64,000 bases of DNA from positions 1-64,000 of IMG/VR virus record IMGVR_UViG_3300043786_000977; one strand, 5' to 3'. A program made the translations under genes and the position numbers. The stretch's first letter is position 1; every line of letters starts with the position of its first letter. Below the pieces are notes generated by a model that saw only the letters and a program-made list of their open reading frames with translations, was not told where the DNA came from and made no database searches. Of the stretch, positions 32,519 to 64,000 are shown piece after piece.

Positions 32519-32530
32519 GTGGAGGTCAAC

Positions 32531-35578: not shown

Positions 35579-35593
35579 TACCAAAGGGGTTAA

Positions 35594-42910: not shown

Positions 42911-44818
42911 ATGACTGTTCGACAATATGCCGCAAGTGTGGTGATCAGTGCGGGTATCGCAATAACTGGCGTTATGTGGTATCAGAACCGTATGCCTTAT
43001 ATAGCTGGTGAGGATATTGCGGCACTAACTGCTGATGCCTATACTGTGCGTAGTGTTGTGATAAGCCCTGCTATTCGACAAGGTTATATGAGAGATGCAT
43101 GGACATACGGGAATGAAGATTATTGGTATCCCGGTGCTCCCGGTACTTGGGACTGGGTTTACAAACAGGTAGGCGAGACAACTATTACTGTGTTCAGAGC
43201 GTCATCTGATATTCAGAATTTATGTGCATTGGTGCAAGATTGTTTCATAGACGCAGATGCACCGGGCGCCCTTTTGGGAGGGACTTATCAGCGTTATTAT
43301 CTAGACCCCCGTTGCCTAAGCGGGGCGGCTGACGAATTGACAATGAAAATAACCCCACAATGGTCTAACACCCCAACATATACGTTATACATACCCGCCG
43401 GGAATTATAAGACAAACATAGTATTTTCAGGGACTATAACCAACATTGATGCTGATGGCGTAACACTATTAGATAGGATGACTACAGGGACTAATAAGTT
43501 TGGTGCACCGTCCGTTTATCTTTTTAGCGCCGCAGTAAATACGCCAATAAGCAGACTAGGCAGTATTTACAGGACGCCTCCACCCGTTTGGCCAGATATG
43601 ACGAGGTTTGATGGAAGGCAGAACTACACCGCATTTACAAACCGCCTGAATGGTTGCGCATCGTGGTGGACGTATGCAGGTATCTCACCTATATCCTATA
43701 TGCTGGAGCCACTCGAAGTATTGCGAGTTACTGATTGTAATCCTGTAAATCTGTCCTACGCATATATTGACTGGCGCAGTTACGAACTAGGGAAGAGTCC
43801 AGATAAAACGTTTACAGACCCCGGGGTTGGTGTCAGTGTGCGTCCAACTGCGTTTATAACGACAAACGGACTCAATGTTATCAGAAAAGTTCTGACGAAT
43901 ATGGTTAGAACTGTTGAATTCTCGCCAGTGTGTGTTGGCACAAATATAACATTCACGCATACAGCAACATACGGTGTAGAGTCTACCAATGGGTTTAGTA
44001 ATTCAGACCCAATCAACTACATTCCATTGGTGACTAATACACTTACTGCAAGCACAAATGCGTTGACTACCACGCTAACTGGGTATCAATTTTATTCTGC
44101 GGAGGAACGGTTATACAATCGACTTTACAAATATCCGTGGGCACCGACAAATTATGTGAGTTCTGCAGATTCGTCTGTGATCTGGACGCATTATAGTTTC
44201 TCACCTACTAATATCCCAATCTCGATGTATACGAACGGATTTGTTAAACGTGTTAGATTTTATGTTACCTGTGACTCGACTACTCCGATGCTCTGGTATC
44301 CACGGCTTAGTGTGTATTCCGACGCTGAAGTTACTTTAACTGGATTAACAGCGTATACCCGTGCAAGGCTGAACGAATACGAGTCCTATACTAATGACTA
44401 TCCGATAGTTGTAAATAATATGTTGGCTGATATAATGCCTGTTGGTGTCCCTAGTGACAATTACCGTTCTTGGGTATGGGTTACAGCTTTGAGTAATAGG
44501 GGGAAAAGTTTTGACAACTTCGCAACCAACCAGATATGGAACCTAATTGGTGATACGACTAACACACTGACAACCCCTGTATTTACGTTTACTAATGGGA
44601 AGTCCCAACTAGGTGATGTATCATTCAGAACGCCTACACAAATGGTAGAGGCGACAGGCCCAGAGATTGATCTTAAGTATCTAAAGGCTTATTGGCTATA
44701 CCACAAAATGCAAATAATGAAGACTATGATGGTAGTTGACTGGAATATCCCATTAATGAGCAATGGGGGCACGAATGTGTATACCCCTGCGTGGGCTACA
44801 ACCAACTCGGTGCCCTGA
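42911..44818 (+). CDS. T-N-rich, aromatic-rich protein with N-terminal hydrophobic segment (putative exported or receptor-binding protein)
   Basis: 635 aa; AASVVISAGIAITGVMWY at the N-terminus; about 19 TN dipeptides; visibly more AT-rich than flanking genes. Confidence 0.6.
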   Translation: MTVRQYAASVVISAGIAITGVMWYQNRMPYIAGEDIAALTADAYTVRSVVISPAIRQGYMRDAWTYGNEDYWYPGAPGTWDWVYKQVGETTITVFRASSDIQNLCALVQDCFIDADAPGALLGGTYQRYYLDPRCLSGAADELTMKITPQWSNTPTYTLYIPAGNYKTNIVFSGTITNIDADGVTLLDRMTTGTNKFGAPSVYLFSAAVNTPISRLGSIYRTPPPVWPDMTRFDGRQNYTAFTNRLNGCASWWTYAGISPISYMLEPLEVLRVTDCNPVNLSYAYIDWRSYELGKSPDKTFTDPGVGVSVRPTAFITTNGLNVIRKVLTNMVRTVEFSPVCVGTNITFTHTATYGVESTNGFSNSDPINYIPLVTNTLTASTNALTTTLTGYQFYSAEERLYNRLYKYPWAPTNYVSSADSSVIWTHYSFSPTNIPISMYTNGFVKRVRFYVTCDSTTPMLWYPRLSVYSDAEVTLTGLTAYTRARLNEYESYTNDYPIVVNNMLADIMPVGVPSDNYRSWVWVTALSNRGKSFDNFATNQIWNLIGDTTNTLTTPVFTFTNGKSQLGDVSFRTPTQMVEATGPEIDLKYLKAYWLYHKMQIMKTMMVVDWNIPLMSNGGTNVYTPAWATTNSVP

Positions 44819-44852: not shown

Positions 44853-44875
44853 TAGAGTCGTAACTAGGAGACTTG

Positions 44876-45274
44876 ATGAGTGCAACACTGACAGTTGAGT
44901 ATCATAAATCATCAGAACAAAAGTCGTTGTTCGGCTTTGCTCTGCGTGTTGTCGTTACCAATGCAGTCGATATGCCTGCAGAGGTCTTCATCTTCCAACG
45001 TGGTGCCACGCCGGCACCCGCTATTGGTGAAACCGTGCGCGACGGGTTCGTTGCCATCGCCGATCCTGTTGATCTGGAGGAGTTACCTGTGGGCGCCCCG
45101 GACCTGGCGAATGAGATTCCCTACTATCGGCTAGCGGAAGTCACACTGGCATTCCGCAGTATGCTCGATCTGGAAGACACGCGACAGTTGATCGCTAACG
45201 ATCTACAGATGCTTGTGCATTCGCTACAGGCAATGGATACATTTGAACTGACTGATACTGTAACGTACGAATGA
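44876..45274 (+). CDS. Hypothetical protein
   Basis: AGGAG RBS, 132 aa. Confidence 0.7.
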   Translation: MSATLTVEYHKSSEQKSLFGFALRVVVTNAVDMPAEVFIFQRGATPAPAIGETVRDGFVAIADPVDLEELPVGAPDLANEIPYYRLAEVTLAFRSMLDLEDTRQLIANDLQMLVHSLQAMDTFELTDTVTYE

Positions 45275-45281
45275 GGTACCC

Positions 45282-45617
45282 ATGTCGACTGAAGTTACTG
45301 CCGTGAGACCTACGATATTGAGTCAGAGCCACGTGAGTCGTGCGATAAGCGATTCACGCTTCTACGAACTGCTGCCTGAGTTTCGCAGTCTACAGGTCAA
45401 ACTCCAGACTATGAAGGTCAATCTGTCAGCATCAGGTGGTTGCGGTGGTTGCCGTCAAAGACGGGCAGTCTCCAATCTATTCAACGATTTCCTAACAATC
45501 GCGTTTGCATTGAGCGATGACGGGAAGGCGCGGCTCAAGACGTACCTTGGAGCGCAGCAGCTAATGGTCAATCGTACGGATCCCGTAACACGACAAGTAC
45601 AACTACGTACTCTGTAG
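45282..45617 (+). CDS. Hypothetical protein with CxxC (GCGGC)
   Basis: GAGG RBS, 111 aa. Confidence 0.7.
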   Translation: MSTEVTAVRPTILSQSHVSRAISDSRFYELLPEFRSLQVKLQTMKVNLSASGGCGGCRQRRAVSNLFNDFLTIAFALSDDGKARLKTYLGAQQLMVNRTDPVTRQVQLRTL

Positions 45618-50522: not shown

Positions 50523-52029
50523 GCCAGCTGTTCGCCAGCGAGTTACCGAGGTCCAGTACCACTTTGCCTGTGGCCTGGGCCAGCCGCACAGCAAGGCCTT
50601 TACCTGGCGCCCCTCCACTGAGAAGCACAAGGCCCGCGTGGTGCTGCTCTACGACGTCTGTGATGCGCTTGTGATCACGCCAGCCAGTCATTACCACGCC
50701 TGTAATGTCAGGGTGCTTATAACGCTTTTGCAGACTCGTGGCTAACCGTTCAGCGTCACCGTGTAGAATGAGCACACCACCCTGGTTGAGCACAGGACCC
50801 ACACGTCCTGTCGCCTGCCACAGTTCAGGGTAAAACTGATCAATGAAACGATCACGTTCAGGGAAGTACGGGTGTACCAGGAAATCGGCCCAGAAGATAC
50901 CCGAGATTGTGCAGGCCAGGAAGTCCGCATGGTTGCCGGCCCAGAGCAGATCACTACCCAACGCCTTCAAATCACAATCAACCAATCCGATACGTTTCAA
51001 GTAGGCCGGGTCTTTAAGGAAATGCTTAGGTGCTTCCTCACCGCGACTGTAGGCAATAATCGCCCGTTCACCGTCCGACATACGTACCACCGATGTCGGT
51101 ACTTTGTGTTTAAGGCGGTGTACGATCATGGCGGCTAATGCGTCGGATGAAAGTATCTTGTTGCAGAAGGCTTCGGTTTCGGCTGACAAGACGATTTTAC
51201 TGAAGTCCGGTCCTTGAACCTGTGGTATTTGTGCCCGTGGTTTTTGTACCTGCTGCTTTATTACGGTTGCTTTTGCCACAACGGGTACTGCGGGTAGACT
51301 CGGGATCGTCCACTTAGGCCACGCCTTCAACTTCTTATCTGACTCTCTGATATAATTCGCACGTCGGTGTAACGGATCCTTTATCCATTCTTTGGGATTT
51401 GGCAGTATCCATTTGTTAGCGCCACGCAAACGGATTAACGGGGTATGTGTGCGTTGCGCCCATACCGCGATATCTTCGTCGTCGCCTGAATGGATTGGCC
51501 CAGTACAAACGTCACGGGTTAAACCGAGCGCCTGTGGGTACGAGGCCATTACACCCGCACCGAGAATGTGTACACCGATATCGCGACTGATAGCATGATC
51601 GTAACCGTACAGGACGCGATTATCTTTCGCCAAGTTACGTGCGGGCATCGGTGCACCATTGCGTATACGATAAACACCACCATGTAGACCTACGATCGCT
51701 TTACGCTGGTAACGGTCAACGGCCTCGACAAGGTATTTAGCGTAGTCTGGTGGGTAGAGTATATCATCATCAACGGATAGATAATAACCGGCTTCGGCGC
51801 CTAACCAATGGAACTTACCGTGACTACCGACATCGGGCGCCGTGCACTCGGGGCCGGCCAGGATCACATCAAGTTTGGCGTCGTTTGGTAGCTCAGGCGG
51901 TCGTTCCGAATACCCGTTCAGATATAAACGCAGTACGTCGCATTGGGGTAGTAGGTCAGCAACTGCACGCAACATACCTGCTTTACGAGGCGGAAACGAC
52001 GCCATGGCAACAATGATTGGATCACTCAT
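50515..52029 (-). CDS. Two-domain glycosyltransferase: GT-A (GT2-like) plus GT-D-fold-like domain
   Basis: ASFPPR...YLSVDDDILYPPDY (DxD) in the N-half; SVVRMSDGE and GKVVLDLG in the C-half. Confidence 0.75.
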   Translation of the reverse strand: MSDPIIVAMASFPPRKAGMLRAVADLLPQCDVLRLYLNGYSERPPELPNDAKLDVILAGPECTAPDVGSHGKFHWLGAEAGYYLSVDDDILYPPDYAKYLVEAVDRYQRKAIVGLHGGVYRIRNGAPMPARNLAKDNRVLYGYDHAISRDIGVHILGAGVMASYPQALGLTRDVCTGPIHSGDDEDIAVWAQRTHTPLIRLRGANKWILPNPKEWIKDPLHRRANYIRESDKKLKAWPKWTIPSLPAVPVVAKATVIKQQVQKPRAQIPQVQGPDFSKIVLSAETEAFCNKILSSDALAAMIVHRLKHKVPTSVVRMSDGERAIIAYSRGEEAPKHFLKDPAYLKRIGLVDCDLKALGSDLLWAGNHADFLACTISGIFWADFLVHPYFPERDRFIDQFYPELWQATGRVGPVLNQGGVLILHGDAERLATSLQKRYKHPDITGVVMTGWRDHKRITDVVEQHHAGLVLLSGGAPGKGLAVRLAQATGKVVLDLGNSLANSWLK

Positions 52030-52059: not shown

Positions 52060-54846
52060 CTACGCTATATTGCGTAACGGTATTATCCTGTCAGCTGCCA
52101 CAACCCGCGGAAGCCAGAGCAGTTTCCGTTCGATCTGTGTATTCCATGTTTCCTTACGGATGATCCAGCAACGGTTCTTATCGACTTCGAGTTCTTCAGG
52201 ACCGTCAACGAGCAAGTTACGCTCCTTCAGTTCCTGCGTCAAGCCTTTGACGTCAAATGATAACTGCGCCGTCAGTTCCTTGTTCATACGATTTACGACT
52301 GCATGACTGATGATGACGTAATCATCCAATACGAAGATGTGTTGGTTACGAGCCGTGAAGCTGGTGGCAGTCGGCATCGCATTGTAGACGGTACAGATGA
52401 TAGGTGACTTGAATGACGCAAAGATGATTCGGTGCAGACTATCGAAGAACGAGTTAACGCCTGCGCCCATGTTATAGTAACTGTGTTTCATGATCTGCTG
52501 CATCATAGGCTGTGTGTCTAGTCCGAGCATAGTACAGATTGCACTGTAGGTACTCCAGGCCGGGTGCTGGCCGGTAGCATATACGTCAGTCGTTTTTGCG
52601 TGCACGATATACTCAAGTACGAAGGACGCAAACGACTCACGCAACTCAGCCAACGCTGCGGGATCGATGACACTCGTGGGTTCTGGTTTATCCGACACTG
52701 GTAATATGTAGGTCGTCCTCAGATCGCCGCCGTACATACCCGCCGTACTGCCGTCGGTTAGGGCGACCAGACTTATGGGACTGTTGAGGATCACTTGTTG
52801 CATACGGTCGCCACGCAGCGGAGGCAGGCAACCAATGAGGGGTAACGTACCTAGTTGTTCGTAAGCCTCAAGACTCTTGATTGGATTGGCAGGATCGATA
52901 ACGGGGATGAAATCATTGTCCGAGAAGAAGGCGCTGAGTTGACGGAATAACGGTTGCCATATACCAGCTTCCGACTCTACATAGAAAAGGTGACGTGGGC
53001 GTTGGTTATGTCCATGCTTCGCGTGGTGTAGTTCCTGTGTCATTTGGTGTACGACGTGCAGCAAACCACTGGTGAATGCTGCCACGTACATATTGTCACA
53101 ACTCTGCAACAGGTAGCGGTAGGGCTCCACCGCGCTTATTACGCTTTGCCCGGGGATTCCAGAGTATACTTGTGTTGCTGCAGCCGGCAACGTATGGATC
53201 TGTTTTTGTGGTGCAATGACAAGTTGATCCGTTCTGATGACAAAATTCGGTAAGTGTAGATCGTGGGCCTGGTCACAGCCCAGTCGTTGAACCTCACGAT
53301 GGAGTTCGCACTTTTCACCCAATTTACATAGGATGTCACGCCAGTCGTAACCCGGGTGCTCGTAGAACGCAATATACGGGGCTTGATTGCGTTCGCCGAA
53401 TGCACGGATGACGTGACGTTGTAATTCCTTTGCCTTGCCCCATATCGGTTCTGGTATACGTACGACTAACGGTAATGTGGCAGTATCTGTAGGTGTCACC
53501 GTGACGATGAGTTCTTCCTCACCTGTGTATGTACGGATTTTATGGTTAACAGTGATGCCGACGTTGCACAAGACTGATTCGTTACCTCGACGATCGAGTG
53601 CTTTGAGTGCCGTAGTCGTGCGATAGAGTCCGCATCCGTTTCCGAGGATCAGGCGATTTGTGGATTCGGCAACAGCTGTTTGTAGAATCTCTAGCCCTTC
53701 TTTCGAGATCTTCAGACGTTGTGCTGCGCTTATTAGTTCTAGACGTACATTGTCAGGTAACGTAACGGAGTAGAATGCCTTGTATACCTCTTCGGTACCG
53801 TTATGACTTAAAAGGCGATCCATTGTTCGGAGTGTCCACGTGTCTAATGCGAGTGTGCCATCCGCACTACTCAGACGATGCCTAAGCTGTTCCGCTGTAA
53901 TCTGTGTAGCGTCGTGGGCCTCCCACACCTTGATCCGTGGTTGTAGGGCGGCGCCACTTACGTAATGCTGGACGGCTAGTGTTTGCAGTGCGTTGAACAG
54001 CGTGAGAGGCTGTGCCTGCGTAGCTAGTAGAAAAAGAATGTCCAATGAGGCGAAACGTTCAGGCAGCGGGAACCCGGCTAGCGCGATGATGGGTGGTCGC
54101 TTACTGGATTCGGCCGTGTAGGTCCCATATAGTAAACTGGCTGCATGTGGATCGAATGTCGCGATCACGGAACGTGGCATATCATCGAACCGCTCCATGT
54201 AGACACCGATATCGTCCCGCGTAATCGTTATCGTTGTAGTCGTCAGTGGTGATGCTGCATCTTCCACGCGAATATGGGTGACCTCGCCGTTGTACGTGAA
54301 TGGGTAGATGATATGATTCGTGCGTTGGTACTTGGTCTTGTTAAATTCCTGGAACGGTCGTGGAATCTCGTCACCCCGAACGAGCAAGCCGATCTCGGGC
54401 GGTAGGACTCGTAGGTTATTCTGCGACAGGCCGGCACGCAGTTGTAACTTATTGGGTGTTTGGCGACAGGCTTGTTGGCATTGGCTTACGTACGCCTGGA
54501 TACGACTTTGTGTGGTGCGCCCTTCCGTATAGGCGGCAGCCTCGCTATCCAATAAGGGTTCTGTCAACAGGTGAGCGTAGGTGCCGCCTGGACGGAATTG
54601 GGCTACGGCTTCTGTAATCGTGAGGCGTTTTACCGCACTGAGTAGACTGACTGCGTCACCATAGAAGCGACAGGCAGGGTCCGCACACTCGAAGAACGTA
54701 TTACCCGTATACGGATTGGCATGAACACGCAAGGTGTCGGCCGCACTAGCGTGCAGGGGACAGCTATACTTGGCGTTGACATTATCCCCCGGATGGGGTA
54801 ATGTACATCCTAAAGCAGATAAGAAGTTGTGGTTATGCAGTTGCAT
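52060..54846 (-). CDS. Primase-like protein with N-terminal CHC2-type zinc finger, apparently degenerate
   Basis: CPLH...FECADPACRFYGDAVSLL...LTITEAV zinc-binding domain; no clear TOPRIM acidic motifs or Walker A. Confidence 0.5.
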   Translation of the reverse strand: MQLHNHNFLSALGCTLPHPGDNVNAKYSCPLHASAADTLRVHANPYTGNTFFECADPACRFYGDAVSLLSAVKRLTITEAVAQFRPGGTYAHLLTEPLLDSEAAAYTEGRTTQSRIQAYVSQCQQACRQTPNKLQLRAGLSQNNLRVLPPEIGLLVRGDEIPRPFQEFNKTKYQRTNHIIYPFTYNGEVTHIRVEDAASPLTTTTITITRDDIGVYMERFDDMPRSVIATFDPHAASLLYGTYTAESSKRPPIIALAGFPLPERFASLDILFLLATQAQPLTLFNALQTLAVQHYVSGAALQPRIKVWEAHDATQITAEQLRHRLSSADGTLALDTWTLRTMDRLLSHNGTEEVYKAFYSVTLPDNVRLELISAAQRLKISKEGLEILQTAVAESTNRLILGNGCGLYRTTTALKALDRRGNESVLCNVGITVNHKIRTYTGEEELIVTVTPTDTATLPLVVRIPEPIWGKAKELQRHVIRAFGERNQAPYIAFYEHPGYDWRDILCKLGEKCELHREVQRLGCDQAHDLHLPNFVIRTDQLVIAPQKQIHTLPAAATQVYSGIPGQSVISAVEPYRYLLQSCDNMYVAAFTSGLLHVVHQMTQELHHAKHGHNQRPRHLFYVESEAGIWQPLFRQLSAFFSDNDFIPVIDPANPIKSLEAYEQLGTLPLIGCLPPLRGDRMQQVILNSPISLVALTDGSTAGMYGGDLRTTYILPVSDKPEPTSVIDPAALAELRESFASFVLEYIVHAKTTDVYATGQHPAWSTYSAICTMLGLDTQPMMQQIMKHSYYNMGAGVNSFFDSLHRIIFASFKSPIICTVYNAMPTATSFTARNQHIFVLDDYVIISHAVVNRMNKELTAQLSFDVKGLTQELKERNLLVDGPEELEVDKNRCWIIRKETWNTQIERKLLWLPRVVAADRIIPLRNIA

Positions 54847-56013: not shown

Positions 56014-56670
56014 GTGGTGAATCTAAGTTATCCCCGCCAACAAGCACTACAGTCCCCTGAGACACTAGCCACAGTCATTCACACGATCTTGCGTGAACAG
56101 TACGGTGAAGAGGTGTATGACTGGGACCCGGTAACAGTCTACCTGGAGACACAGGCAGATTTCCGTGCAGATATGTGTTCGGAGGCGATCGATCGCTGGT
56201 GTGCCATTCAGGTGGTTATGACCAGCGACGCGTTCTTCAAGCGTTTAGATGCCTTCCTGGGTATCTGTAACACAATAGCGGATGGTCAGCCCTTCTTCGG
56301 TACATTCGACCCTGTAACAGTGGAGGAGGCTGCCTGGACGATCGCAGAGGTCGCGTTCAATCGGGAACTGCTCCCATTCTCATATGCTATCAAGCAGTAT
56401 CTGCGGACGATACTGAAACAAGAGGGTTACACAGAATCGACATACCCTGCAATCTTTGCAGAGGTCTTTGATAAACAACCTGACGGCGACACCGTGCGCG
56501 CCGGTCTGGCTGCTGTAAACAATAATACAAACCTCGATACGTACCTGGACGACCAGATAGCCGACATGGTCTCCCAGTTCAACCGTATACCCGATTTGAA
56601 GGGTATGGATGACATCATCCTTCGACGGGGCTTAGAAGAAGCACTACAGTCGGCAGGAGAGAAGAAATGA
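56014..56670 (+). CDS. Hypothetical acidic protein
   Basis: GGGAGG RBS, GTG start (56014 or 56017). Confidence 0.7.
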   Translation: MVNLSYPRQQALQSPETLATVIHTILREQYGEEVYDWDPVTVYLETQADFRADMCSEAIDRWCAIQVVMTSDAFFKRLDAFLGICNTIADGQPFFGTFDPVTVEEAAWTIAEVAFNRELLPFSYAIKQYLRTILKQEGYTESTYPAIFAEVFDKQPDGDTVRAGLAAVNNNTNLDTYLDDQIADMVSQFNRIPDLKGMDDIILRRGLEEALQSAGEKK

Positions 56671-56972
56671 GATCAGCATTACTAACAGTGGAGTTCTGGG
56701 TGACGATGGTAACGAACGTCGTCGGTTTAGTTGTCCTGTTCGGTGGACTATCCGCGGATAAAGCAGATTCGCTGAAGTCGACCCTGACAGTGATCATAGG
56801 TGCCGTACTACCGCTGGTCGCGTCGACAGTATACGCCAAGTCGCGTAGTGATCTGAAACGCACAATTGCAGATGCAACACTTTATCGTCTAACGCCTACG
56901 GATGCAGACGGTAAGGTACGCACTGCTTCAGTGGACGACGCGACAGCTGTTTTAAAACGTCTGGGCATCTAA
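56667..56972 (+). CDS. Holin-like small membrane protein
   Basis: 101 aa, two hydrophobic helices, TVEFW N-terminal motif, charged C-terminal tail. Confidence 0.45.
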   Translation: MRSALLTVEFWVTMVTNVVGLVVLFGGLSADKADSLKSTLTVIIGAVLPLVASTVYAKSRSDLKRTIADATLYRLTPTDADGKVRTASVDDATAVLKRLGI

Positions 56973-58708
56973 TGACCAACGTACGTCCAGAAAAACCGAC
57001 AGGCCCCGGTAATCGGGGTCTGTCGACTACCGTTACCCGTGAGCTCGGAACCAAGACCGGTGCTTATGCAGGGCTTGTCAAGATCGCACAAGGAGTGTTA
57101 GGCGCTGTCCGAAGCGGGGTGCTTTCGCCTTTGTCTAAAGCCAGAAGTATTACGAGTGTAGGTAACGCGGTCACCCAAGGTCTGCCCAGTTCTACTTCAA
57201 ATAGTCTGCCAGGACGCGCCATCGAGACTGCGGATACGGTACTAGGCACTACTGCAAGTGGTGTCGGTTTGACCGGTTACGGTGCTGAGTTGACGGGTGC
57301 TGCACTTCGGGGAATACCTCTTGCCGCTAACACGGTGGCGACTACAAAAGGCATAGCGGGAGCCGCGGGTCGTGTTGCCGTACCCTTGGCGCTCGCAGGG
57401 CATGCGATTGATACAGCCCGCTTAATTAACGATCCACGGGGAGTGACTGATGCGGCTGCCGCCAATATTCAGGATTACGGTGACAGCTTCGGCAGTGCGA
57501 TGAAAGCAGTTGGGCATAATACGCTGCAAGCAGTAGGCTCATCTATTCCAACAATCGCAGCTACAGTTCGTGGTGTAGGCGAATTAGGTTCACAACTCGT
57601 GGAAAACAGACGCCTCGCTGCTCGAGATCGACAGCTTGCACCGCGGTATCGTATACTTCAATTACAACAACAGCAACGGCAACGGTTAAAACAACTGCAG
57701 CCACCACAACAGGCCGGGACGTTCGTACAGAAGACTAGTATGTTCTCAGGCCTCGTCAAGATCGCCCAGCAGAACTTTGCTCCAGGTATCGTCGACAAGG
57801 CAGTCTACGGCGATGTGTTGGGTACCCTGAAACCCGGCGACATCACTGACTTCGTATTGCAACACCACAGTACAGTACGTAACCCCAAGTATCCACATTA
57901 CGACATGCGTCTAGGTACCAAGGATACGAATCTTTTCAGTTGGGCCATACCCAAGGCAGAATTGCCGCGTCCAGGCACATCCAAGATGCCGATCCCGCAG
58001 ACTCAATTGCATACGTACCAGTACGGTAGCTTCGAAGGTAAGATCCCACACGGATATGGCGCCGGCGTAGTAAGAATGGCCGACAAGGGTAAGGCAGTCA
58101 TCACCCGTGTCACGCCAAACACGCTCCATTTTACCCTGGGGCATACCAAGGTACCTACACGTTACGTGCTTGTCCATATCGGTGGACGGGACGGTAAGAT
58201 GTGGCAGTTAATCGCGAAACCCGAACCAGGTAAGGTACCGGGCGCGGACGAGGAACCCATCTACGCACGGATAAACGCCGTCGACCAGGACGATGCGATC
58301 CAACAGGCAACCCAGGTCCAGGCGAAAATTGACAAGGCTGCGTCGCTTATTCCGTTGCGCTTCATCAACAAGAAGGGCGGGGTGAAAGCATCAGCGGCTG
58401 TTGAGATTGCAGATACCGCTGAACTGCGTCGCATTGGTTTATCCAAACGTGCATCGCTACCTGCCAATCACGGTATGTTCTTCGATAAGGTCGGTGCCTT
58501 CTGGATGAAGGATGTTCACTTTCCTTTAGACTTGGTATTTGTCGATCGACATGGTACGGTACTCGAGAAGCACGCGATGCCAGTAGACAAGGGCGGACGT
58601 AAGTTATATAGACCATCTAGCGCTGACGTTGCGCATGCGATTGAACTCCCGCACGGTTGGTGTGACCGTTATGGGATAACGACGGGTGACATTGTAAAGG
58701 CGGGTTAA
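56972..58708 (+). CDS. Multidomain protein: Gly/Ala hydrophobic domain, LigD-type DNA 3'-phosphoesterase domain and DUF192 domain
   Basis: FVLQHH..HYDMRL..LFSWAIPK..H...Y..FEG.IP.GYGAGVV...DKG (LigD PE); VEIADT...GL..R..LP...GMFF...FWMKDVHFPLDLVF...IELP.G (DUF192). Confidence 0.85.
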   Translation: MTNVRPEKPTGPGNRGLSTTVTRELGTKTGAYAGLVKIAQGVLGAVRSGVLSPLSKARSITSVGNAVTQGLPSSTSNSLPGRAIETADTVLGTTASGVGLTGYGAELTGAALRGIPLAANTVATTKGIAGAAGRVAVPLALAGHAIDTARLINDPRGVTDAAAANIQDYGDSFGSAMKAVGHNTLQAVGSSIPTIAATVRGVGELGSQLVENRRLAARDRQLAPRYRILQLQQQQRQRLKQLQPPQQAGTFVQKTSMFSGLVKIAQQNFAPGIVDKAVYGDVLGTLKPGDITDFVLQHHSTVRNPKYPHYDMRLGTKDTNLFSWAIPKAELPRPGTSKMPIPQTQLHTYQYGSFEGKIPHGYGAGVVRMADKGKAVITRVTPNTLHFTLGHTKVPTRYVLVHIGGRDGKMWQLIAKPEPGKVPGADEEPIYARINAVDQDDAIQQATQVQAKIDKAASLIPLRFINKKGGVKASAAVEIADTAELRRIGLSKRASLPANHGMFFDKVGAFWMKDVHFPLDLVFVDRHGTVLEKHAMPVDKGGRKLYRPSSADVAHAIELPHGWCDRYGITTGDIVKAG

Positions 58709-58773
58709 TAACGTTGCTATTAACGTTATAACTGATTGTGTATACACACCGCCATTTTAAGGTGGAGGATACG

Positions 58774-61700
58774 ATGCGATTTTTAGGTATAGTACTTGTA
58801 GCATTACTTGGTTTGATCCCGGTATCTCACGGGCAGAACGCTACGCTTGCTCAACTCGGTGCCCGTGGTGTAACCGAGGTTGGCGGGTCCAGCATATACG
58901 CCCATTATATGCTACGTCTCGGACCTGACGGGCGTATCACAATGGCCGTGTTACCTGCTGGTCTCGGCGTACCTGTTCCTGGGTCACAGATCGCTTATCT
59001 CGATCCTGTCACCGGTGTCGATGATCCGTTGCGTGTAGGCGGACCGACAACGCCTTACAAGACGTTAAATTACGCTACGACCACGTACCCGAGTAACGCC
59101 GTGTCCGGAGTCATTTACGTTTTGGCACCAGGTACATATGCATCTACCCTGATTGATACGACAACTACTACGGGTAGACGCACGCTTACGTTGTTAGGTT
59201 ATGAGACCCGACGTACGTATATACCAGAGGTGAAGTACTACGGAAGCAGCGGCGGTGACGTGACCGTCACGTTACACGGTGTGCATGTTGGTAAACTCTG
59301 GCAAGCCAACAACAAAGCGATGACGGTATACCTGACCGGGAATGCCCGGATTGATTCGTTGGAAATGAACGGTGCCAAGCCCTGTACTGTGTATCGTGAA
59401 TCCGGGACTGTCATTGGATCATTCACAGGGTCATTGATGTACACGAACCAATGGCTCGACACAGCGACGCAGATGGGGTATACGCCGACCAATACGGCGC
59501 ACTGGTATGGTAGTGAGCCTCTGACGATTGCAGACGCGTTACACGCGCTGGCCGGCCGGTGCCCTGTTCCGTACGGGACGGTACCTGGCGATATGTTGAC
59601 CTGGGATGGATCCAACTGGGTACGTGTTGCGAACGGTACTACAAACGATTTCCTCATCGGAGGCACCATGCCGTCATTCCAACCGCGTTATATCTGGCCT
59701 GGCACTTCGGCTGGCGCTGTACCTTATTGGGATATCGGGACAACCAACTGGTTATCAGTCACGGGTACCACGAATAGCCAACATGTCCTGTTCGGTGGTG
59801 TGACACCGGCTTTCGGTAGGTTACAGGCGACACATATGGATTACATCAACGGTACGACAACCACGGTACATGCTGTACTTGGTGATTATGCAGTACGCCT
59901 TAATAACCTGGAACTTGTCAGTAACCTGGTCGTATGGGCCGCGAACAGCTGGAGCAATAGTGCTGCCCGCGGCATTACAAATAATCAGGTTGCATTATGG
60001 GATTGGGCCGCGAACAGCTGGAGCAATAGTCCCGCATTCGGAATCACGAGCAACAACATCACGTTATGGACAACCGCGGCAACAAATTGGGTCGGTAGTG
60101 CTGCTTTTGGTATCACGTTAGAGGATACGGGTCGCTGGAACACGTACATGACCAACAGTATACCGATACGTTACTTACGCCGTGAGGGCGCTCTGTTAGG
60201 TCAAACCATAGTCTTCGACGGTACCAACTGGGTTTCTGCCGTCGCGGATTGGTGGATCACGAACGGTCCGGAACGTATGGTAACAGTCGAGGGGTATACC
60301 AACACAGTTGACAAAGCCTTCTTGACTGATGGAACACGACCGATGACAGCTCGAATTCCAATCTTCGTGGATGATGGCGTTGCTGCCATCTCAATCGGGG
60401 CGTGGCAAGGTACAAGTTACGTTTACAACGTATTCGGTGAACTCTATTTGCGAGATAACACAAGGCCCGGTTATAGAATTACCACAGCTAAAGAGTTGGA
60501 CGATTATGCGCGAACCAATTACGTGACAGACATCGTGGTCGCTTCCACCAACCCAATCCCTAACTGGATTATATCTTCCACCAACCCAATCCCTAACTGG
60601 ATTATATCTTCCACCAACCCAATCCCTAGCTGGATCATGTCCGCTACCAACCCCATCCCCTCGTGGATAGCCTCTGCGACCAGCCCCATTCCTAGTTGGA
60701 TCACAGCCTCCACCTCAGGTCTCGTGAGAGCGACCATTACAAATGGTCTTGCTTCCACCAATTACGTGATTGCGTCAACTAACCCTATTCCCTTATGGAT
60801 AACTTCTGCTACAAACCCGATCCCTAGCTGGATAACTTCTGCAACAAACCCCATTCCTAGCTGGATCATATCCGCCACAAACCCTATCCCTAGCTGGATA
60901 ACTGCTTCGACATCAGGTCTTGTTAGAGCAACAATCACGAACGGGCTGGCTTCAACCAATTACGTGATTGCTGCAACCAACCCTATCCCTGGCTGGATAA
61001 CTTCTGCAACCAACCCTATCCCTGGCTGGATAACTTCTGCGACCAACCCTATCCCTAGCTGGATAACCTCTGCAACTTCGGGTCTCGTAAGAGCAACAAT
61101 CACGAACGGGCTGGCTTCCACCAATTACGTGATCGCTGCAACCAATGGACTTGTAACGAAGACTATTACTAACGGCCTTGCTTCGATCTCGTATGTGAAC
61201 GGTGTTACAAGTGGCATACCTGCAATGATAACTGCTGCTACTAACAGTCTTGTAACAAAGGCTATCACGAATGGTTTGGCCTCTATCGACTACGTGACTG
61301 GAGCAATCTCCGGTATCCCTATTTATGCAACAGGGAACAATATCTATGTGGACAATCAGAGAACAGATCCATTCACACCAGACGGCACAATCATGCGTCC
61401 GTATGCAACAGTGTCCGCAGCTATGGCCGTAATCGGCAGTTCACAACCGGCAGACTGGGAGAATGTCACGCTCCGTTTCTACGCCGTGAAGGTGATGCCT
61501 GGAACATACGTCGAAGATGTGACGGTCCCGTGGAAGCCTTTCGTTTCAATAGACCTGTCATCTGCGGTCATTGTGGGTAACATTACTCGTTCAATTCCCG
61601 ACGGCGACTTTTCTACCAGGGTCTCGACTCTGGTTATCAAGGGTGATTCGTTACGTCCCGCATATCTGGACGGACAGCATACGGTGATTGGTATTGCTGG

Positions 61701-62895
61701 TAAGGTCATATTTGAAGCGGCTTCGTCGAGTCTTGGAATGTCTCCTTTCCACGAACTACATGTAATTGATGCCGGTATATCGGGAGGAGTTGAGTACAAG
61801 GGAACCAGCAATACAAACTCTGGTCAATCTGGACACATCTTCTTGCGTGATTCACAAGTGGGTACGATCCAATCCATAGAAGGTTGGGCTGGCGTTACTC
61901 TGTTCTCATACGGCTGGGGTGGTGGTCATACAGGCGGTGGATACGCAGGTAGTGGCATAGGTTCACTGATCGGTAGCGTTCTGCCTTATAATCTTCAATC
62001 GACGATGATCAGCGGCGGCATGAACCTCACAGACGCTTATCCCGGAACCAGTCCAGAGATGTTGTGGCACAACGTCAGATTTGAAACTAATTTCATATAT
62101 GTCGTTACCAATGTTACTTATGGAGTTAAACTCGATACAGCCTCTTACAATTCTTGGCTAGAAGCATCGTTGCCGTCTGAGCGTGGAGTTTGGACCACCG
62201 ACGGTAAGATGGTGCTGACTGATTACGGTTCAGGGTCGTTTGGTAATGCCACGAATATGTTCCGTGGTGTCGGCACAACGGGAGCAGTGACCAGCGTATC
62301 TGCGGACACCAACAAGTACCTGAGGGGTGATGGTAACTGGATAGCAGTTCCGATGGGTCCTGCTGGAACTAACGGAGTTAATGGAACTAACGGCTCTAAC
62401 GGTGTGGCCTTCGTGACTATTTCCAATGTGGTAACACTCGCCTCCGGCTCTTCTGCTTATGTGAGCAACGTGGTGGTCGGAACCACGAACCGCCTGACGT
62501 TCGGCATCCCTGCCGGTAGGGATGGTGTAATTACTAACAGCGGGTACATGGCCATCACCAACTGGCCGACCGCTGCTGGCATCACCAACATCATCACCTT
62601 GGTTCCCGGGTACACCATCTATAACTTAACCGTTACAAATCAACCAACGGTGATTAATTTTGCTTTTTCTAATTCACCAATAGCGAGTCAGGCAGTCAAC
62701 TTCGAGTTGGTCTTGAAGCAGACAACCACCAACACGTATATCTATTTACCAGGAACGAATCGGGTGTATTACTTCTCGACCCCCACCACCAACGCAACGG
62801 TAGCAAACCAAAGGCATTACTCAAGCTGGCGTGTGTGGATGGAAGGCTCAACCACAAATATCTTCTGCAACCAATGGCTGACGAGGAACCCATGA
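58774..62895 (+). CDS. Large T-N-rich fibre/adhesin-like protein with Sec-type signal peptide
   Basis: ATG 58774 after GGAGG; MRFLGIVLVALLGLIPVSHG|Q; GDMLTWDGSNW and KYLRGDGNW fibre motifs; two GxxxxPYxT beta-helix-entry motifs; short collagen-like GxN run. Confidence 0.75.
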   Translation: MRFLGIVLVALLGLIPVSHGQNATLAQLGARGVTEVGGSSIYAHYMLRLGPDGRITMAVLPAGLGVPVPGSQIAYLDPVTGVDDPLRVGGPTTPYKTLNYATTTYPSNAVSGVIYVLAPGTYASTLIDTTTTTGRRTLTLLGYETRRTYIPEVKYYGSSGGDVTVTLHGVHVGKLWQANNKAMTVYLTGNARIDSLEMNGAKPCTVYRESGTVIGSFTGSLMYTNQWLDTATQMGYTPTNTAHWYGSEPLTIADALHALAGRCPVPYGTVPGDMLTWDGSNWVRVANGTTNDFLIGGTMPSFQPRYIWPGTSAGAVPYWDIGTTNWLSVTGTTNSQHVLFGGVTPAFGRLQATHMDYINGTTTTVHAVLGDYAVRLNNLELVSNLVVWAANSWSNSAARGITNNQVALWDWAANSWSNSPAFGITSNNITLWTTAATNWVGSAAFGITLEDTGRWNTYMTNSIPIRYLRREGALLGQTIVFDGTNWVSAVADWWITNGPERMVTVEGYTNTVDKAFLTDGTRPMTARIPIFVDDGVAAISIGAWQGTSYVYNVFGELYLRDNTRPGYRITTAKELDDYARTNYVTDIVVASTNPIPNWIISSTNPIPNWIISSTNPIPSWIMSATNPIPSWIASATSPIPSWITASTSGLVRATITNGLASTNYVIASTNPIPLWITSATNPIPSWITSATNPIPSWIISATNPIPSWITASTSGLVRATITNGLASTNYVIAATNPIPGWITSATNPIPGWITSATNPIPSWITSATSGLVRATITNGLASTNYVIAATNGLVTKTITNGLASISYVNGVTSGIPAMITAATNSLVTKAITNGLASIDYVTGAISGIPIYATGNNIYVDNQRTDPFTPDGTIMRPYATVSAAMAVIGSSQPADWENVTLRFYAVKVMPGTYVEDVTVPWKPFVSIDLSSAVIVGNITRSIPDGDFSTRVSTLVIKGDSLRPAYLDGQHTVIGIAGKVIFEAASSSLGMSPFHELHVIDAGISGGVEYKGTSNTNSGQSGHIFLRDSQVGTIQSIEGWAGVTLFSYGWGGGHTGGGYAGSGIGSLIGSVLPYNLQSTMISGGMNLTDAYPGTSPEMLWHNVRFETNFIYVVTNVTYGVKLDTASYNSWLEASLPSERGVWTTDGKMVLTDYGSGSFGNATNMFRGVGTTGAVTSVSADTNKYLRGDGNWIAVPMGPAGTNGVNGTNGSNGVAFVTISNVVTLASGSSAYVSNVVVGTTNRLTFGIPAGRDGVITNSGYMAITNWPTAAGITNIITLVPGYTIYNLTVTNQPTVINFAFSNSPIASQAVNFELVLKQTTTNTYIYLPGTNRVYYFSTPTTNATVANQRHYSSWRVWMEGSTTNIFCNQWLTRNP
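60541..61143 (+). repeat. 33-bp coding repeats (S/A-TNPIPSWITS) punctuated by three GLVRATITNGLASTNYV units
   Basis: About 12 copies of the 11-aa unit in three blocks. Confidence 0.9.
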
Positions 62896-64000
62896 TAAAG
62901 AAATTCATAGCTCTGGCTTGTTTAACTGCATCTTCGGTGATGGCTGGTTTGCCGTTTAGTCTCGATCCGTTTGGACGGTTGGGCACTTCGGCTTATGTCG
63001 GTGCTACTGGTGGAAGTATCTCGTATAGTTATACAAATGGCACTTACTACAAGATTCACACTTTCACAAGCTCTGGAACTCTGACAGTTACTTCGGGCGG
63101 AACTGTTGATGCTTTGGTCGTGGCCGGCGGTGGAGGTAGTGGGGAAAACGGTGGAGGTGGAGGTGGTGCTGGAGGTTTGGTCTATACTACTACAAATGTC
63201 GTGATGCAGAACTACACCGTAACTGTTGGAGCAGGAGGATTGGTAAACCAGAATGGTAATCAATCTGCATTTGCTTCAATTGCTGCTATTGGCGGTGGTA
63301 GGGGTGGTGGTTTGAATGGTTATGGTGTTAGTGGCGGATCAGGCGGTGGTGGCGGTTCAGCTTACCAGAACACAAATAATTTTATTGGAGGATCAGGATC
63401 GCAAGGAAGCAGTGGCGGAAATGGCAGAATGGGACAATCATCTGCGTCTCAAATCGCAGGTGGAGGCGGAGGAGGTTTCAACAGCGCTGGACTAACACCA
63501 ACAACTGCTCAAGGTGGAAGAGGAGGAGATGGGACAAACTATGTTATAAGTGGTGCCAATGTTTATTATGCGGGTGGTGGTGGTGGTGGTTCTGGCACTG
63601 CAGTTGGAACTGCGGGAGTGGGCGGAGGAGGAACTGGCGGAGGAGGACTGACTAAACCAACTGCAGGCGTGAATGGTACAGGTGGTGGAGCCGGAGGTGG
63701 TGGTAATCCATGGGTAGCTGGAACCAACGGCGGCTCCGGCATAGTCATCGTAAGGTATCCACTTTCAACTCCATCGTATGTGTTCCCATCCGAAATCTCA
63801 GGACTAACTCTATGGCTAGACTCGGCGGATGCAACGACATTAACCACTTCTGGAATTAATGTGACTGAGTGGCGTGACAAATCGGCTACGGCGGCTATCT
63901 TCTCACCCGTAGCGCCTTATTACCCGACCAAGGACGCAAACTTGATCAACAACATAAGTCCGATACTTTTTTACACGGACAATGCGCACCAGATAAAATT
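62892..64000 (+). CDS. Signal-peptide-bearing glycine-rich fibre-domain protein followed by a LamG/ConA-like domain start; 3'-truncated and absent from the ORF track
   Basis: ATGA overlap; MIKKFIALACLTASSVMA|G; IHTFTSSGT..LVVAGGGG..GGSGIVIVRY glycine-rich domain; LWLDSAD...VTEWRDKS; open to the window end. Confidence 0.8.
   Translation, partial: MIKKFIALACLTASSVMAGLPFSLDPFGRLGTSAYVGATGGSISYSYTNGTYYKIHTFTSSGTLTVTSGGTVDALVVAGGGGSGENGGGGGGAGGLVYTTTNVVMQNYTVTVGAGGLVNQNGNQSAFASIAAIGGGRGGGLNGYGVSGGSGGGGGSAYQNTNNFIGGSGSQGSSGGNGRMGQSSASQIAGGGGGGFNSAGLTPTTAQGGRGGDGTNYVISGANVYYAGGGGGGSGTAVGTAGVGGGGTGGGGLTKPTAGVNGTGGGAGGGGNPWVAGTNGGSGIVIVRYPLSTPSYVFPSEISGLTLWLDSADATTLTTSGINVTEWRDKSATAAIFSPVAPYYPTKDANLINNISPILFYTDNAHQIK

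What the first reader, a model, noticed from the sequence alone, without database searches (positions are those of the whole stretch)
58774..64000. Phage fibre-like proteins with Sec signal peptides and extreme T-N enrichment
Seen: two coupled genes start with classical signal peptides yet contain phage fibre motifs (GDMLTWDGSNW, YLRGDGNW, collagen-like GxN, glycine-rich domain, LamG-like start). 58774..62895 has about 49 TN dipeptides plus many SN. Many are T-N-P, so they are not canonical N-x-S/T sequons. Known: tailed-phage fibres normally fold in the cytoplasm without signal peptides. Inference: these proteins are exported to the periplasm or surface, possibly modified at [T/S]-N by a host system, and then join virions at lysis or decorate the infected cell. 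From memory, T-N-rich exported proteins are common in Verrucomicrobiota/Kiritimatiellota, which would hint at the host; this needs verification.
Basis: partly seen in the sequence, partly recalled or inferred. Interest (0 to 1): 0.75.

Follow-up and report, generated by a model that had tools for sequence, protein, structure and literature searches.

The report
Exported fibre-like proteins of a jumbo phage
A 209-kb freshwater phage makes tail-fibre-type proteins that start with classical secretion signals and share an odd Thr-Asn-rich style with secreted proteins of Verrucomicrobiota, so they probably work in the infected cell's envelope.

Summary
Gene 1 (58774-62895, 1373 aa) and gene 2 (62892-64433, 513 aa) overlap at ATGA. 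Both have Shine-Dalgarno sites and classical n-h-c signal peptides.

Gene 1 has exactly 49 Thr-Asn dipeptides against 12.8 expected (z 11). The excess persists outside its 11-residue tandem repeats. Gene 2 is not enriched.

A profile search found 91 relatives of gene 1's N-terminal right-handed beta-helix module:
- 46 carry signal peptides and 4 carry lipoprotein signals, placed directly before a conserved motif. Their TN observed/expected ratio is about 2.8-3.1.
- About 16 lack a signal. They sit in ordinary tail-fibre modules and show no TN excess (0.82).

Signal-bearing members lie after a DUF192 gene, inside cassettes of further exported proteins, in related large phages.

In my sampling, TN is enriched 1.8-fold in signal-bearing proteins of Verrucomicrobiota. 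It is not enriched in Bacteroidota, Acidobacteriota or Elusimicrobiota.

I found no evidence for modification at TN. N-x-S/T sequons occur at chance level, and TN sits before beta-strands, often followed by Trp.

Whether the exported fibres stay on the cell envelope, which I favour, or join virions at lysis is unresolved.

The parts
58759..58769 (+). Shine-Dalgarno AAGGTGGAGGA, 4 nt upstream of the ATG of gene 1
   Evidence: Sequence printed. GGAG is 8.6-fold enriched upstream of this phage's starts.
58774..58833 (+). Gene 1 signal peptide (residues 1-20, MRFLGIVLVALLGLIPVSHG). Predicted SPase I cut before Gln21.
   Evidence: The homologue P0002 has a different but equally signal-like N-terminus, and alignment identity starts at GQN. 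The public gene call P0001 misses it by starting at GTG 59230.
58834..60141 (+). Conserved family module (residues 21-456). It comprises the mature N-terminal motif QN..LAQLGA.GVTE, a right-handed beta-helix (about 66-229), GD.L.W.G.NW-type strands, and Trp-rich 23-residue repeats (59935-60141).
   Evidence: 44% identity to P0002 over 460 aa. Profile search gave 91 hits. AF2 pLDDT is above 90 for about 70-260. VIA-align Z is 9.9 to ChiW and to the Agrobacterium phage 7-7-1 tail fibre, and Z 8.5 to CBA120 TSP3. TRF finds period 69 at 59935-60069.
60532..61311 (+). Tandem-repeat region (residues 587-846). About 13 copies of an 11-residue unit [AS]TNPIP[SNG]WI[TI]S are interleaved with GLVRATITNGLASTNYVIA spacers. 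The region holds 21 of the 49 TN.
   Evidence: TRF finds period 33 and higher-order periods 165/198 at 60542-61145. Low-coverage assemblies break here.
61312..62895 (+). Orphan C-terminal region of gene 1 (residues 847-1373) plus the stop codon. It contains a second beta-helix-like start motif (MRPYATV...MPGTYVEDV), a Gly-rich patch, YLRGDGNW, and a collagen-like Gly-x-y x6 run at 62356-62409.
   Evidence: No homologue among 5.8 billion proteins apart from itself. No Pfam hit. Single-sequence AF2 failed, pLDDT 32.6. TN is 16 vs 4.4.
62892..64000 (+). Gene 2 (continues to 64433 outside the window, 513 aa). Signal peptide residues 1-18 (62892-62945). Gly_rich_2 domain residues 60-289 (63069-63758). 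Unassigned C-terminal part.
   Evidence: phrog_2295 at 1.4e-45. There are 2228 homologues, including signal-peptide, prepilin, T9SS-tail and signal-less phage-fibre forms.
56972..58708 (+). LigD_N (3'-phosphoesterase) - DUF192 fusion protein. It is the conserved upstream neighbour of every signal-bearing family member whose context I inspected.
   Evidence: Pfam. Synteny in L001-L006 and L008.
42911..44818 (+). Unrelated 635-aa protein at the end of the baseplate module. It has an N-terminal hydrophobic anchor (AASVVISAGIAITGVMWY) and the same TN excess (19 vs 5.3).
   Evidence: No similarity to gene 1.
44873..45617 (+). Pair of small genes (133 aa and 111 aa). In signal-less relatives this pair directly precedes the family fibre. 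Here the next slot holds an S8 subtilase (45626-46618).
   Evidence: Subtilase Pfam hit 9.6e-43.

Best explanation
SHOWN
- The window is the first 64 kb of a complete 208.9-kb jumbo myovirus from lake water.
- Genes 1 and 2 are the first two of four consecutive genes (58774-66507) whose products begin with Sec/SPase-I-type signal peptides.
- Gene 1 belongs to a phage fibre family. The family shares an N-terminal module: a conserved motif followed by a short right-handed beta-helix. Its C-terminal parts are freely exchanged.
- In one branch of the family the protein has no signal and sits in the tail-fibre module. In the branch to which gene 1 belongs it carries a signal peptide, or in four cases a lipoprotein signal, placed so that cleavage exposes the same conserved N-terminus.
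- In that branch the gene has moved to a cassette of exported proteins downstream of a DUF192 gene.
- The Thr-Asn excess goes with the export signal inside the family. It matches a bias I measured in signal-bearing proteins of Verrucomicrobiota.

INFERRED
- The host is a Verrucomicrobiota (PVC) bacterium.
- The pre-proteins are translocated by Sec and cleaved. Gene 1 then begins with Gln21.
- They act in the periplasm or on the surface of the infected cell, as fibre-like binding proteins anchored or docked by the conserved N-terminal module, with the variable C-terminal part exposed.
- The most likely role is binding or occupying host surface structures. That could mean receptor masking or superinfection exclusion, protecting progeny from debris, or adhesion.
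- TN is a structural idiom of this export-adapted beta-rich protein style (turn-Thr-Asn-strand, often TN-Trp), not a modification site.
For: Genome and phage nature:
- One contig with a 127-bp end overlap.
- IMG/VR record with direct terminal repeats, CheckV 100% complete.
- Tail sheath and baseplate J hits. Large terminase at 66678-68549 on the minus strand.
- Lake and freshwater runs from 2016-2024 hold the sequence. Contigs from other runs match with zero differences.

Start and signals:
- Shine-Dalgarno sites sit before both ATGs.
- There are four signal-bearing genes in a row.

Family:
- 91 profile hits, with the module always at the extreme N-terminus.
- N-termini were listed.
- 46 signal-peptide members, 4 lipobox members and 17 without a signal (one of these is a missed signal peptide). 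TN O/E is 2.84, 3.12 and 1.23 respectively, or 0.82 for the 16 truly signal-less.

Contexts:
- Signal-bearing members lie directly after DUF192 in L001-L006 and L008.
- They are followed by more signal-peptide or lipoprotein genes, including a PATR protein.
- Signal-less members sit at the end of a baseplate/fibre module of related 143-176-kb phages.
- This phage has no second family member.

Fold: beta-helix, Z 9.9.

Host idiom:
- Verrucomicrobiota signal-bearing proteins have TN 378 vs 204.5 (O/E 1.85) and NT O/E 0.94. Signal-less proteins have TN O/E 0.94.
- TN is their most enriched dipeptide after MK.
- Bacteroidota give 0.91 and 0.89. Acidobacteriota give 0.34 and Elusimicrobiota 0.66.
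- Trp follows TN more often than expected in both the family and the Verrucomicrobiota signal-bearing proteins.
- The phage uses Shine-Dalgarno sites strongly, unlike the Bacteroidota sample.

Precedent: phage proteins that adopt the host's export idiom are described for Porphyromonas gingivalis phages (PMC10367356).
Against: - No signal-peptide predictor was available. The calls rest on inspection and a crude hydrophobicity rule, and cleavage is untested.
- The conserved N-terminal motif is kept as strictly in signal-bearing members as in the signal-less virion fibres. The phage has no signal-less copy. Both facts fit a protein that still docks to the virion.
- Gene 2's domain family is also found in ordinary phage fibres.
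- Host evidence is indirect. There is no CRISPR, tRNA or prophage link.
- Only four phyla were sampled. Four of the ten Verrucomicrobiota genomes show no TN excess.
- Gln at +1 in 30 of 36 family members recalls the Bacteroidetes Q-rule.
- The specific envelope role (masking, adhesion) has no direct evidence.
Confidence: 0.45

Rival explanations
1. These are true virion fibres that take a detour. They are exported and cleaved, fold in the periplasm, and dock through the conserved N-terminal motif onto finished particles when lysis mixes the compartments.
For: - Signal-less relatives are encoded in the tail-fibre module, with the motif at residues 6-12. Cleavage of the signal-bearing forms would expose the equivalent N-terminus.
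- The motif is nearly invariant in both groups.
- This phage has no signal-less copy, yet it keeps the baseplate module and the two small genes that precede the fibre elsewhere.
- Both fibre-type proteins of the cassette carry signals: the fibre and the Gly_rich_2 protein, also in L005.
Against: - Four members are lipoproteins, including one in the same position after DUF192 (L008). Lipid anchoring does not fit release onto virions.
- The cassette also holds exported proteins that are not fibre-like, and lipoproteins.
- I know of no tailed phage with Sec-exported fibres (my own knowledge; searches found none).
- The docking test by complex prediction gave no answer.
Confidence: 0.3
2. The hydrophobic N-termini are not working export signals. 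The proteins are ordinary cytoplasmic fibres, and the hydrophobic segment is a structural or assembly element.
For: - The public gene caller did not even include the segment.
- No experimental or dedicated-predictor evidence for export exists.
- The protein at 42911-44818 in the tail module has a less signal-like hydrophobic N-terminus.
Against: - The Shine-Dalgarno site fixes the start at 58774.
- The n-h-c architecture with small -3/-1 residues recurs in 46 divergent members while the sequence itself drifts.
- Lipobox variants, each with a linker of about 30 residues, exist.
- Signal-less homologues show the segment is dispensable for the fold.
Confidence: 0.07
3. The TN excess marks sites of a post-translational modification, for example glycosylation by a host or phage enzyme, applied to exported proteins.
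For: - TN enrichment tracks export in the family and in Verrucomicrobiota.
- The phage encodes a UDP-galactopyranose mutase and a GT-D-like glycosyltransferase 7-9 kb upstream.
Against: - No known bacterial glycosylation motif is T-N (my own knowledge).
- N-x-S/T sequons are at chance level (O/E 1.02-1.06).
- 11 of the TN are followed by Pro.
- In the confident part of the model, TN lies at the turn just before a strand.
- The flanking preference is Trp/Val/Ile, typical of a structural repeat.
- No glycosyltransferase lies in the cassette itself.
Confidence: 0.1
4. The host is a Bacteroidota bacterium, and Gln after the cleavage site reflects the Bacteroidetes Q-rule.
For: - 30 of 36 signal-bearing family members have a small residue followed by Gln just before the motif.
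- 5 of 12 other signal-bearing proteins in these phages also have Gln at +1.
- The Q-rule is described as specific to Bacteroidetes (PMC5837995).
Against: - Only 2 of 7 signal-like proteins of this phage have Gln at +1.
- The phage uses Shine-Dalgarno sites heavily: 56% of starts against a 12% background. The Bacteroidota sample barely exceeds background.
- There is no TN excess in 20 Bacteroidota genomes.
- No T9SS C-terminal domain was found.
- A PATR-repeat protein sits in a sister phage's cassette.
- The profile gives 9 weak hits in 401 Verrucomicrobiota genomes against 1 in 401 Bacteroidota genomes.
Confidence: 0.08

Closest known systems
Beta-helix tail fibres and tailspikes of tailed phages (Agrobacterium phage 7-7-1 fibres 9rkv; CBA120 TSP1-3; Acinetobacter phage Fri1 gp49)
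   Same: - Right-handed parallel beta-helix in the conserved module (Z 7.5-9.9).
- Conserved N-terminal part with exchangeable C-terminal parts.
- Signal-less family members lie in tail-fibre modules.
   Different: - Those proteins have no signal peptide and assemble in the cytoplasm.
- Gene 1 carries one and lies outside the tail module.
- No sequence-level match to any solved structure.
Exported proteins of Porphyromonas gingivalis phages that obey the host's Q-rule (PMC10367356)
   Same: Phage genes with Sec signal peptides that copy a phylum-specific feature of host exported proteins. The authors read them as a means to alter the host envelope.
   Different: - Those are unnamed proteins of temperate siphoviruses, and the idiom is one residue at +1.
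- Here the proteins are fibre-family members of up to 2309 aa in the family.
- Here the idiom is a dipeptide bias along the whole chain.
Phage superinfection-exclusion and receptor-blocking envelope proteins (T5 Llp lipoprotein, Cor; my own knowledge)
   Same: A phage-encoded, Sec-exported (in some family members lipidated) protein that acts at the infected cell's envelope. This is the proposed way of working.
   Different: - Llp and Cor are small single-domain lipoproteins with no fibre ancestry.
- No receptor binding has been shown here.
Large exported beta-rich proteins of Verrucomicrobiota (PATR-repeat and related)
   Same: - Signal peptide, high Thr/Asn content and TN excess with Trp after TN.
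- Weak profile hits to the beta-helix start in 9 of 401 genomes.
- A PATR protein lies in a sister phage's cassette.
   Different: The conserved N-terminal motif and module were not found in any of the 802 bacterial genomes searched. All family contexts I inspected are phage contigs.
Inovirus receptor-binding protein g3p (my own knowledge)
   Same: A viral receptor-binding protein made with a cleavable Sec signal peptide.
   Different: Filamentous phages assemble at the membrane. This phage has a contractile tail and a terminase-packaged head, both built in the cytoplasm.

Membership tests
Sec / signal peptidase I signal peptide | Basic n-region, hydrophobic h-region of 7-15 residues, and a c-region with small residues at -3 and -1 | tested here: met
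   Gene 1: MR / FLGIVLVALLGLIPV / SHG. Gene 2: MIKK / FIALACLTASSV / MA. The same architecture occurs in 46 family members. This rests on inspection and a simple rule, not on SignalP.
Sec / signal peptidase I signal peptide | Actual translocation and cleavage | not testable with these tools
   Needs reporter fusions or N-terminal mass spectrometry.
Lipoprotein (signal peptidase II) signal | Lipobox L-[AS]-[GA]-C at the end of the h-region | tested here: not met
   Gene 1 has no Cys in the signal. In gene 2 the Cys sits inside the h-region without a lipobox. Four relatives (P0005, P0021, P0035, P0045) do have ...GGC, TGC, TGC, TGC followed by a linker.
Phage tail fibre / tailspike | Beta-helical or fibrous fold | tested here: met
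   Residues 66-229 form a right-handed beta-helix, with Z 9.9 to a phage tail fibre and to ChiW. Foldseek alone was weak, E >= 0.03.
Phage tail fibre / tailspike | Encoded in the tail/baseplate module | tested here: not met
   Gene 1 lies 14 kb downstream of the module, between a DUF192 gene and the terminase. Signal-less relatives do lie in the module.
Phage tail fibre / tailspike | Component of the virion; trimer docked to the baseplate | tested here: inconclusive
   Complex prediction of three copies with the two small conserved proteins gave no answer. Virion proteomics is not available.
Pfam Gly_rich_2 (PF21722) | Score above the gathering cut-off | tested here: met
   Gene 2 residues 60-289 score 54.3 bits against 24.3.
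LamG / Laminin_G_3 domain (gene 2 C-terminus) | Pfam or pairwise match | tested here: not met
   No Pfam family at E<=1 for residues 290-513. No BLAST match to the LamG-bearing P0104. Only a short end motif looks similar by eye.
DUF2793 (PF10983) phage fibre domain | Pfam match | tested here: not met
   No hit in gene 1. Its homologue P0002 has the domain at residues 819-885, in its non-homologous C-terminal part.
N-glycosylation substrate | Excess of N-x-S/T sequons | tested here: not met
   O/E is 1.02 in the family and 1.05 in Verrucomicrobiota signal-bearing proteins. Gene 1 has 13 sequons.
Bacteroidetes Q-rule substrate | Gln at +1 as a general property of the organism's exported proteins | tested here: inconclusive
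   Gene 1 and most family members have Gln at +1. Only 2 of 7 signal-like proteins of this phage do. Shine-Dalgarno use and TN statistics argue against a Bacteroidota host.
T9SS cargo | C-terminal sorting domain (Por_Secre_tail) | tested here: not met
   No Pfam hit in gene 1 or gene 2.
Diversity-generating retroelement target | Reverse transcriptase in the genome | tested here: not met
   No RVT_1 match in the whole phage genome, and the control genomes rang.

The most novel reading that the evidence does not exclude
A whole clade of freshwater jumbo myoviruses sends its distal tail fibres through the host Sec pathway. The fibres would mature in the periplasm in the compositional style of the host's own secreted proteins and be mounted on cytoplasmically built particles only at lysis. 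That would be a two-compartment assembly route not known for tailed phages.
Probability: 0.25. Interest if true: 0.85.

Novelty: new variant of a known kind. Interest (0 to 1): 0.62.

Why it matters
Tailed-phage fibres are taken to be cytoplasmic proteins. Here a fibre family has a large branch with secretion or lipoprotein signals fitted precisely onto its conserved N-terminus.

Either outcome would be new:
- Phages redeploy receptor-binding-type proteins to the infected cell's envelope. That would be a new kind of surface remodelling or exclusion device.
- Virion assembly can span two cell compartments.

The Thr-Asn bias gives a cheap, alignment-free marker that ties uncultured phages to Verrucomicrobiota-like hosts. 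It also points to an unexplained rule in how that phylum builds its exported proteins.

There is a practical lesson too. The public gene call for this protein starts 152 codons too late, so automated annotation hides the signal.

Tried and rejected
- Close relatives in cultured phages and IMG/VR: none found. The only hits were low-complexity matches to tape-measure genes.
- Sequence search of solved structures with gene 1 and two tail-module proteins: nothing.
- Search with the C-terminal 528 residues of gene 1: only itself. Its single-sequence AF2 model was useless, pLDDT 32.6.
- ESM Atlas look-alikes: only weak viral fibre/pectate-lyase/collagen leads, scores 0.83-0.86.
- Host from the UDP-galactopyranose mutase: no pattern hits, and about 50% best identity in both Verrucomicrobiota and Bacteroidota, so uninformative.
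- Terminase relatives are distant, 28.7% identity to a Salmonella phage, so no host inference is possible.
- Family alignments were too divergent for back-translated genome scans. No 'relatives' can be drawn for a virus record.
- DGR idea (Asn-rich template): rejected, no reverse transcriptase.
- DNA-level cause of TN: rejected, all eight codon pairs are used.
- Paralogy between the exported proteins and tail-module proteins, as expected for a receptor-mask copy: none found.
- Promoter and terminator scan: counts at chance level.
- tRNAs in the window: none.
- Complex prediction: no answer.
- Literature searches found no report of Sec-signal tail fibres or of a TN bias.

Full report
**What the sequence is**

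The window is the first 64 kb of a single 208,908-bp contig. Its ends overlap by 127 bp. IMG/VR classes it as having direct terminal repeats, and CheckV rates it complete.

It encodes a tail sheath (12910-16059), a baseplate J protein (28615-30222) and a large terminase (66678-68549, minus strand). It is therefore a jumbo myovirus.

Public runs that hold it are lake and freshwater metagenomes from 2016 to 2024. Contigs from four other runs match 58700-64000 without a single difference. The genes are real and stable.

No cultured phage is close. The best terminase identity is 28.7%.

**Checking the observation**

Gene 1:
- The ORF spans 58738..62895.
- The start is ATG 58774, four bases after the Shine-Dalgarno AAGGTGGAGGA.
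- The product (1373 aa) begins MRFLGIVLVALLGLIPVSHG|QNATLAQ.

Gene 2:
- It starts at 62892 inside ATGA, overlapping gene 1's stop, with GAGGA upstream.
- It ends at 64433, outside the window.
- It begins MIKKFIALACLTASSVMA|GLPF.

Both N-termini have the basic, hydrophobic and small-residue layout of Sec/SPase I signals. The public gene call for gene 1 starts at an internal GTG, 152 codons downstream, and so hides the signal.

The glycine-rich part is Pfam Gly_rich_2. The 'LamG-like' end of gene 2 could not be confirmed.

**The Thr-Asn bias**

- Gene 1 has 49 TN. Shuffling its own residues gives 12.8 +/- 3.2, with a maximum of 25 in 5000 shuffles.
- NT occurs 6 times, and half of all Asn residues follow a Thr.
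- An 11-residue tandem repeat ([AS]TNPIP[SNG]WI[TI]S, about 13 copies) contributes 21 of the 49. The flanking parts are still enriched: 12 vs 4.6 and 16 vs 4.4.
- All eight codon pairs are used, so selection acts on the protein.
- Gene 2 is not enriched (5 vs 3.1).
- The unrelated protein at 42911-44818 has an N-terminal hydrophobic anchor and is enriched (19 vs 5.3).
- Together these two proteins hold 68 of the phage's 205 TN in 3% of its residues.

**A family, and a natural experiment**

Among 5.8 billion proteins, only one full-length-range relative of gene 1 turned up. This is P0002, 44% identical over the first 460 residues and then unrelated. It has a different but equally signal-like N-terminus. 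Identity begins exactly at G-Q-N.

A profile of the shared part found 91 proteins, and the module always sits at the extreme N-terminus. I scored the 67 that include the N-terminal motif:

| Group | Members | TN O/E |
|---|---|---|
| Signal peptide | 46 | 2.84 |
| Lipoprotein signal plus linker | 4 | 3.12 |
| No signal | 17 | 1.23 |

One of the 17 is a signal peptide my rule missed. The other 16 have TN O/E of 0.82. NT is at expectation in all groups. In the family as a whole, TN is the most over-represented dipeptide (2.95), followed by NW (2.37).

**Genomic contexts**

Every signal-bearing member I could place lies directly downstream of a DUF192 gene, alone or fused to LigD_N, on phage-like contigs. 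This covers the window, L001-L006 and L008.

It is followed by further genes with signal peptides or lipoboxes. These include a Gly_rich_2 protein in L005 and a PATR-repeat protein in L006. In the window phage, four signal-bearing genes run from 58774 to 66507.

Signal-less members sit at the end of a baseplate/fibre module of 143-176-kb phages, right after a conserved pair of small genes. The gene-size pattern of that module matches 32519-40302 of the window. One such contig also carries the 879(-)/348/217/DUF192 block, so these are related phages.

The window phage keeps the small-gene pair (44873-45617). The next slot holds an S8 subtilase. The signal-bearing gene 1 is its only family member.

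The simplest reading is that a virion fibre gene acquired a signal and moved into a cassette of exported proteins, or the reverse.

**Fold**

With the family alignment, AF2 models residues about 70-260 at pLDDT above 90. An aligner that does not depend on Foldseek places residues 66-229 on right-handed beta-helices:
- Z 9.9 to chitinase ChiW and to the Agrobacterium phage 7-7-1 tail fibre
- Z 8-9 to pectin methylesterases, pectate lyases and CBA120 tailspikes

In the confident part of the model, the TN pairs (GTTN-DFLI, GTTN-WLSV) lie just before strands.

**Host and the meaning of TN**

I extracted ORFs from stretches of named genomes and split them with the same crude signal rule.

| Sample | Signal-bearing TN O/E | Signal-less TN O/E |
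|---|---|---|
| 9 Verrucomicrobiota genomes (incl. Akkermansia, one Lentisphaerae) | 1.85 (378 vs 204.5; NT 0.94) | 0.94 |
| A tenth genome of the phylum (second Lentisphaerae) | 1.06 | 0.98 |
| 20 Bacteroidota genomes | 0.91 and 0.89 | 0.92 and 0.92 |
| Acidobacteriota | 0.34 | 1.17 |
| Elusimicrobiota | 0.66 | 1.01 |

Six of the ten Verrucomicrobiota genomes have a signal-bearing O/E of at least 1.58.

Trp is over-represented right after TN both in the family (3.9-fold) and in the Verrucomicrobiota signal-bearing proteins (2.0-fold). N-x-S/T sequons are at chance everywhere.

The phage relies on Shine-Dalgarno sites: 56% of starts against a 12% background. That does not fit the Bacteroidota sample. 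It offsets the one pro-Bacteroidota hint, Gln at +1 in most family members.

Other phyla remain untested, and there is no direct host link.

**How it most likely works**

Export is the well-supported step. What the exported proteins then do is inference.

I favour action at the envelope of the infected cell, for four reasons:
- Positional orthologues can be lipoproteins.
- The cassette also encodes exported proteins that are not fibre-like.
- The gene has left the tail module.
- Phage proteins that imitate the host's export idiom to alter the envelope have a precedent (PMC10367356).

The main rival is that the fibres are exported, mature in the periplasm and dock on particles at lysis. The strictly conserved N-terminal motif and the lack of a signal-less copy keep it alive. 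A complex prediction meant to probe docking gave no answer.

Modification at TN has no support.

**Novelty**

Exported phage proteins and beta-helix fibres are both known. A fibre family with a large signal-bearing branch, a conserved exported cassette in jumbo phages, and a dipeptide idiom shared with one host phylum were not found in the literature I could search.

I rate it a new variant of a known kind.

Noticed in passing
window 56667-56972: A 101-aa protein with two hydrophobic helices (holin-like) lies immediately upstream of the LigD_N-DUF192 gene. The exported cassette may therefore sit next to a lysis function.
   Followed up: no
window 56972-58708; L001 3726-6980; L006 5705-9591: A DUF192 domain is fused to, or adjacent to, a LigD 3'-phosphoesterase domain. 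In L001 the fusion also carries HD and ligase-OB-like parts. This is the conserved upstream neighbour of the signal-bearing fibres. Its role is unknown.
   Followed up: partly
window 45626-46618, 49419-50522, 50515-52029(-): S8 subtilase, UDP-galactopyranose mutase and a GT-D-like glycosyltransferase lie between the tail module and the cassette. The mutase is about 50% identical to bacterial ones in two phyla, so it gives no host signal.
   Followed up: partly
window 52060-54846(-): A 928-aa protein with an N-terminal Cys/His-rich zinc-finger-like segment and no Pfam or PHROG hit. Proteins of similar size (904, 944 and 879 aa) occupy the same position and strand in related phage contigs (L002, L006, the P0072 contig); I did not compare their sequences.
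   Followed up: no
window 42911-44818: An unrelated 635-aa protein at the end of the baseplate module has an N-terminal membrane-anchor-like helix and the same TN excess (19 vs 5.3). This is a second, independent case of the idiom in this phage.
   Followed up: partly
L017 8551-10507 (genome 64551-66507): Genes 3 and 4 of the cassette also have signal peptides. Gene 4 carries about seven tandem 16-residue repeats (KAVADAPVYxSAxTGS).
   Followed up: no
window 59230 (P0001): The public protein record for gene 1 starts at an internal GTG and lacks the first 152 residues, including the signal peptide and the conserved motif.
   Followed up: yes
window 40504-42258(-): A 584-aa antisense ORF lies wholly inside the 867-aa gene at 40295-42898. 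It is probably spurious but is unusually long.
   Followed up: no
genome 160-178 kb (L013-L014): A cluster of small genes with signal-peptide or lipoprotein-like N-termini, for example 161939, 162965, 169824, 174940 and 177452. The 129-aa product of 174940 is also TN-rich (4 vs 0.8).
   Followed up: no
L001 10719-12233: The gene after the fibre in the closest relative is not a Gly_rich_2 protein. It is a signal-bearing 504-aa protein that opens with a W..G..NW.P...D.v motif. I recall that motif from Verrucomicrobiota/Planctomycetota exported proteins; this is from memory and was not tested.
   Followed up: no
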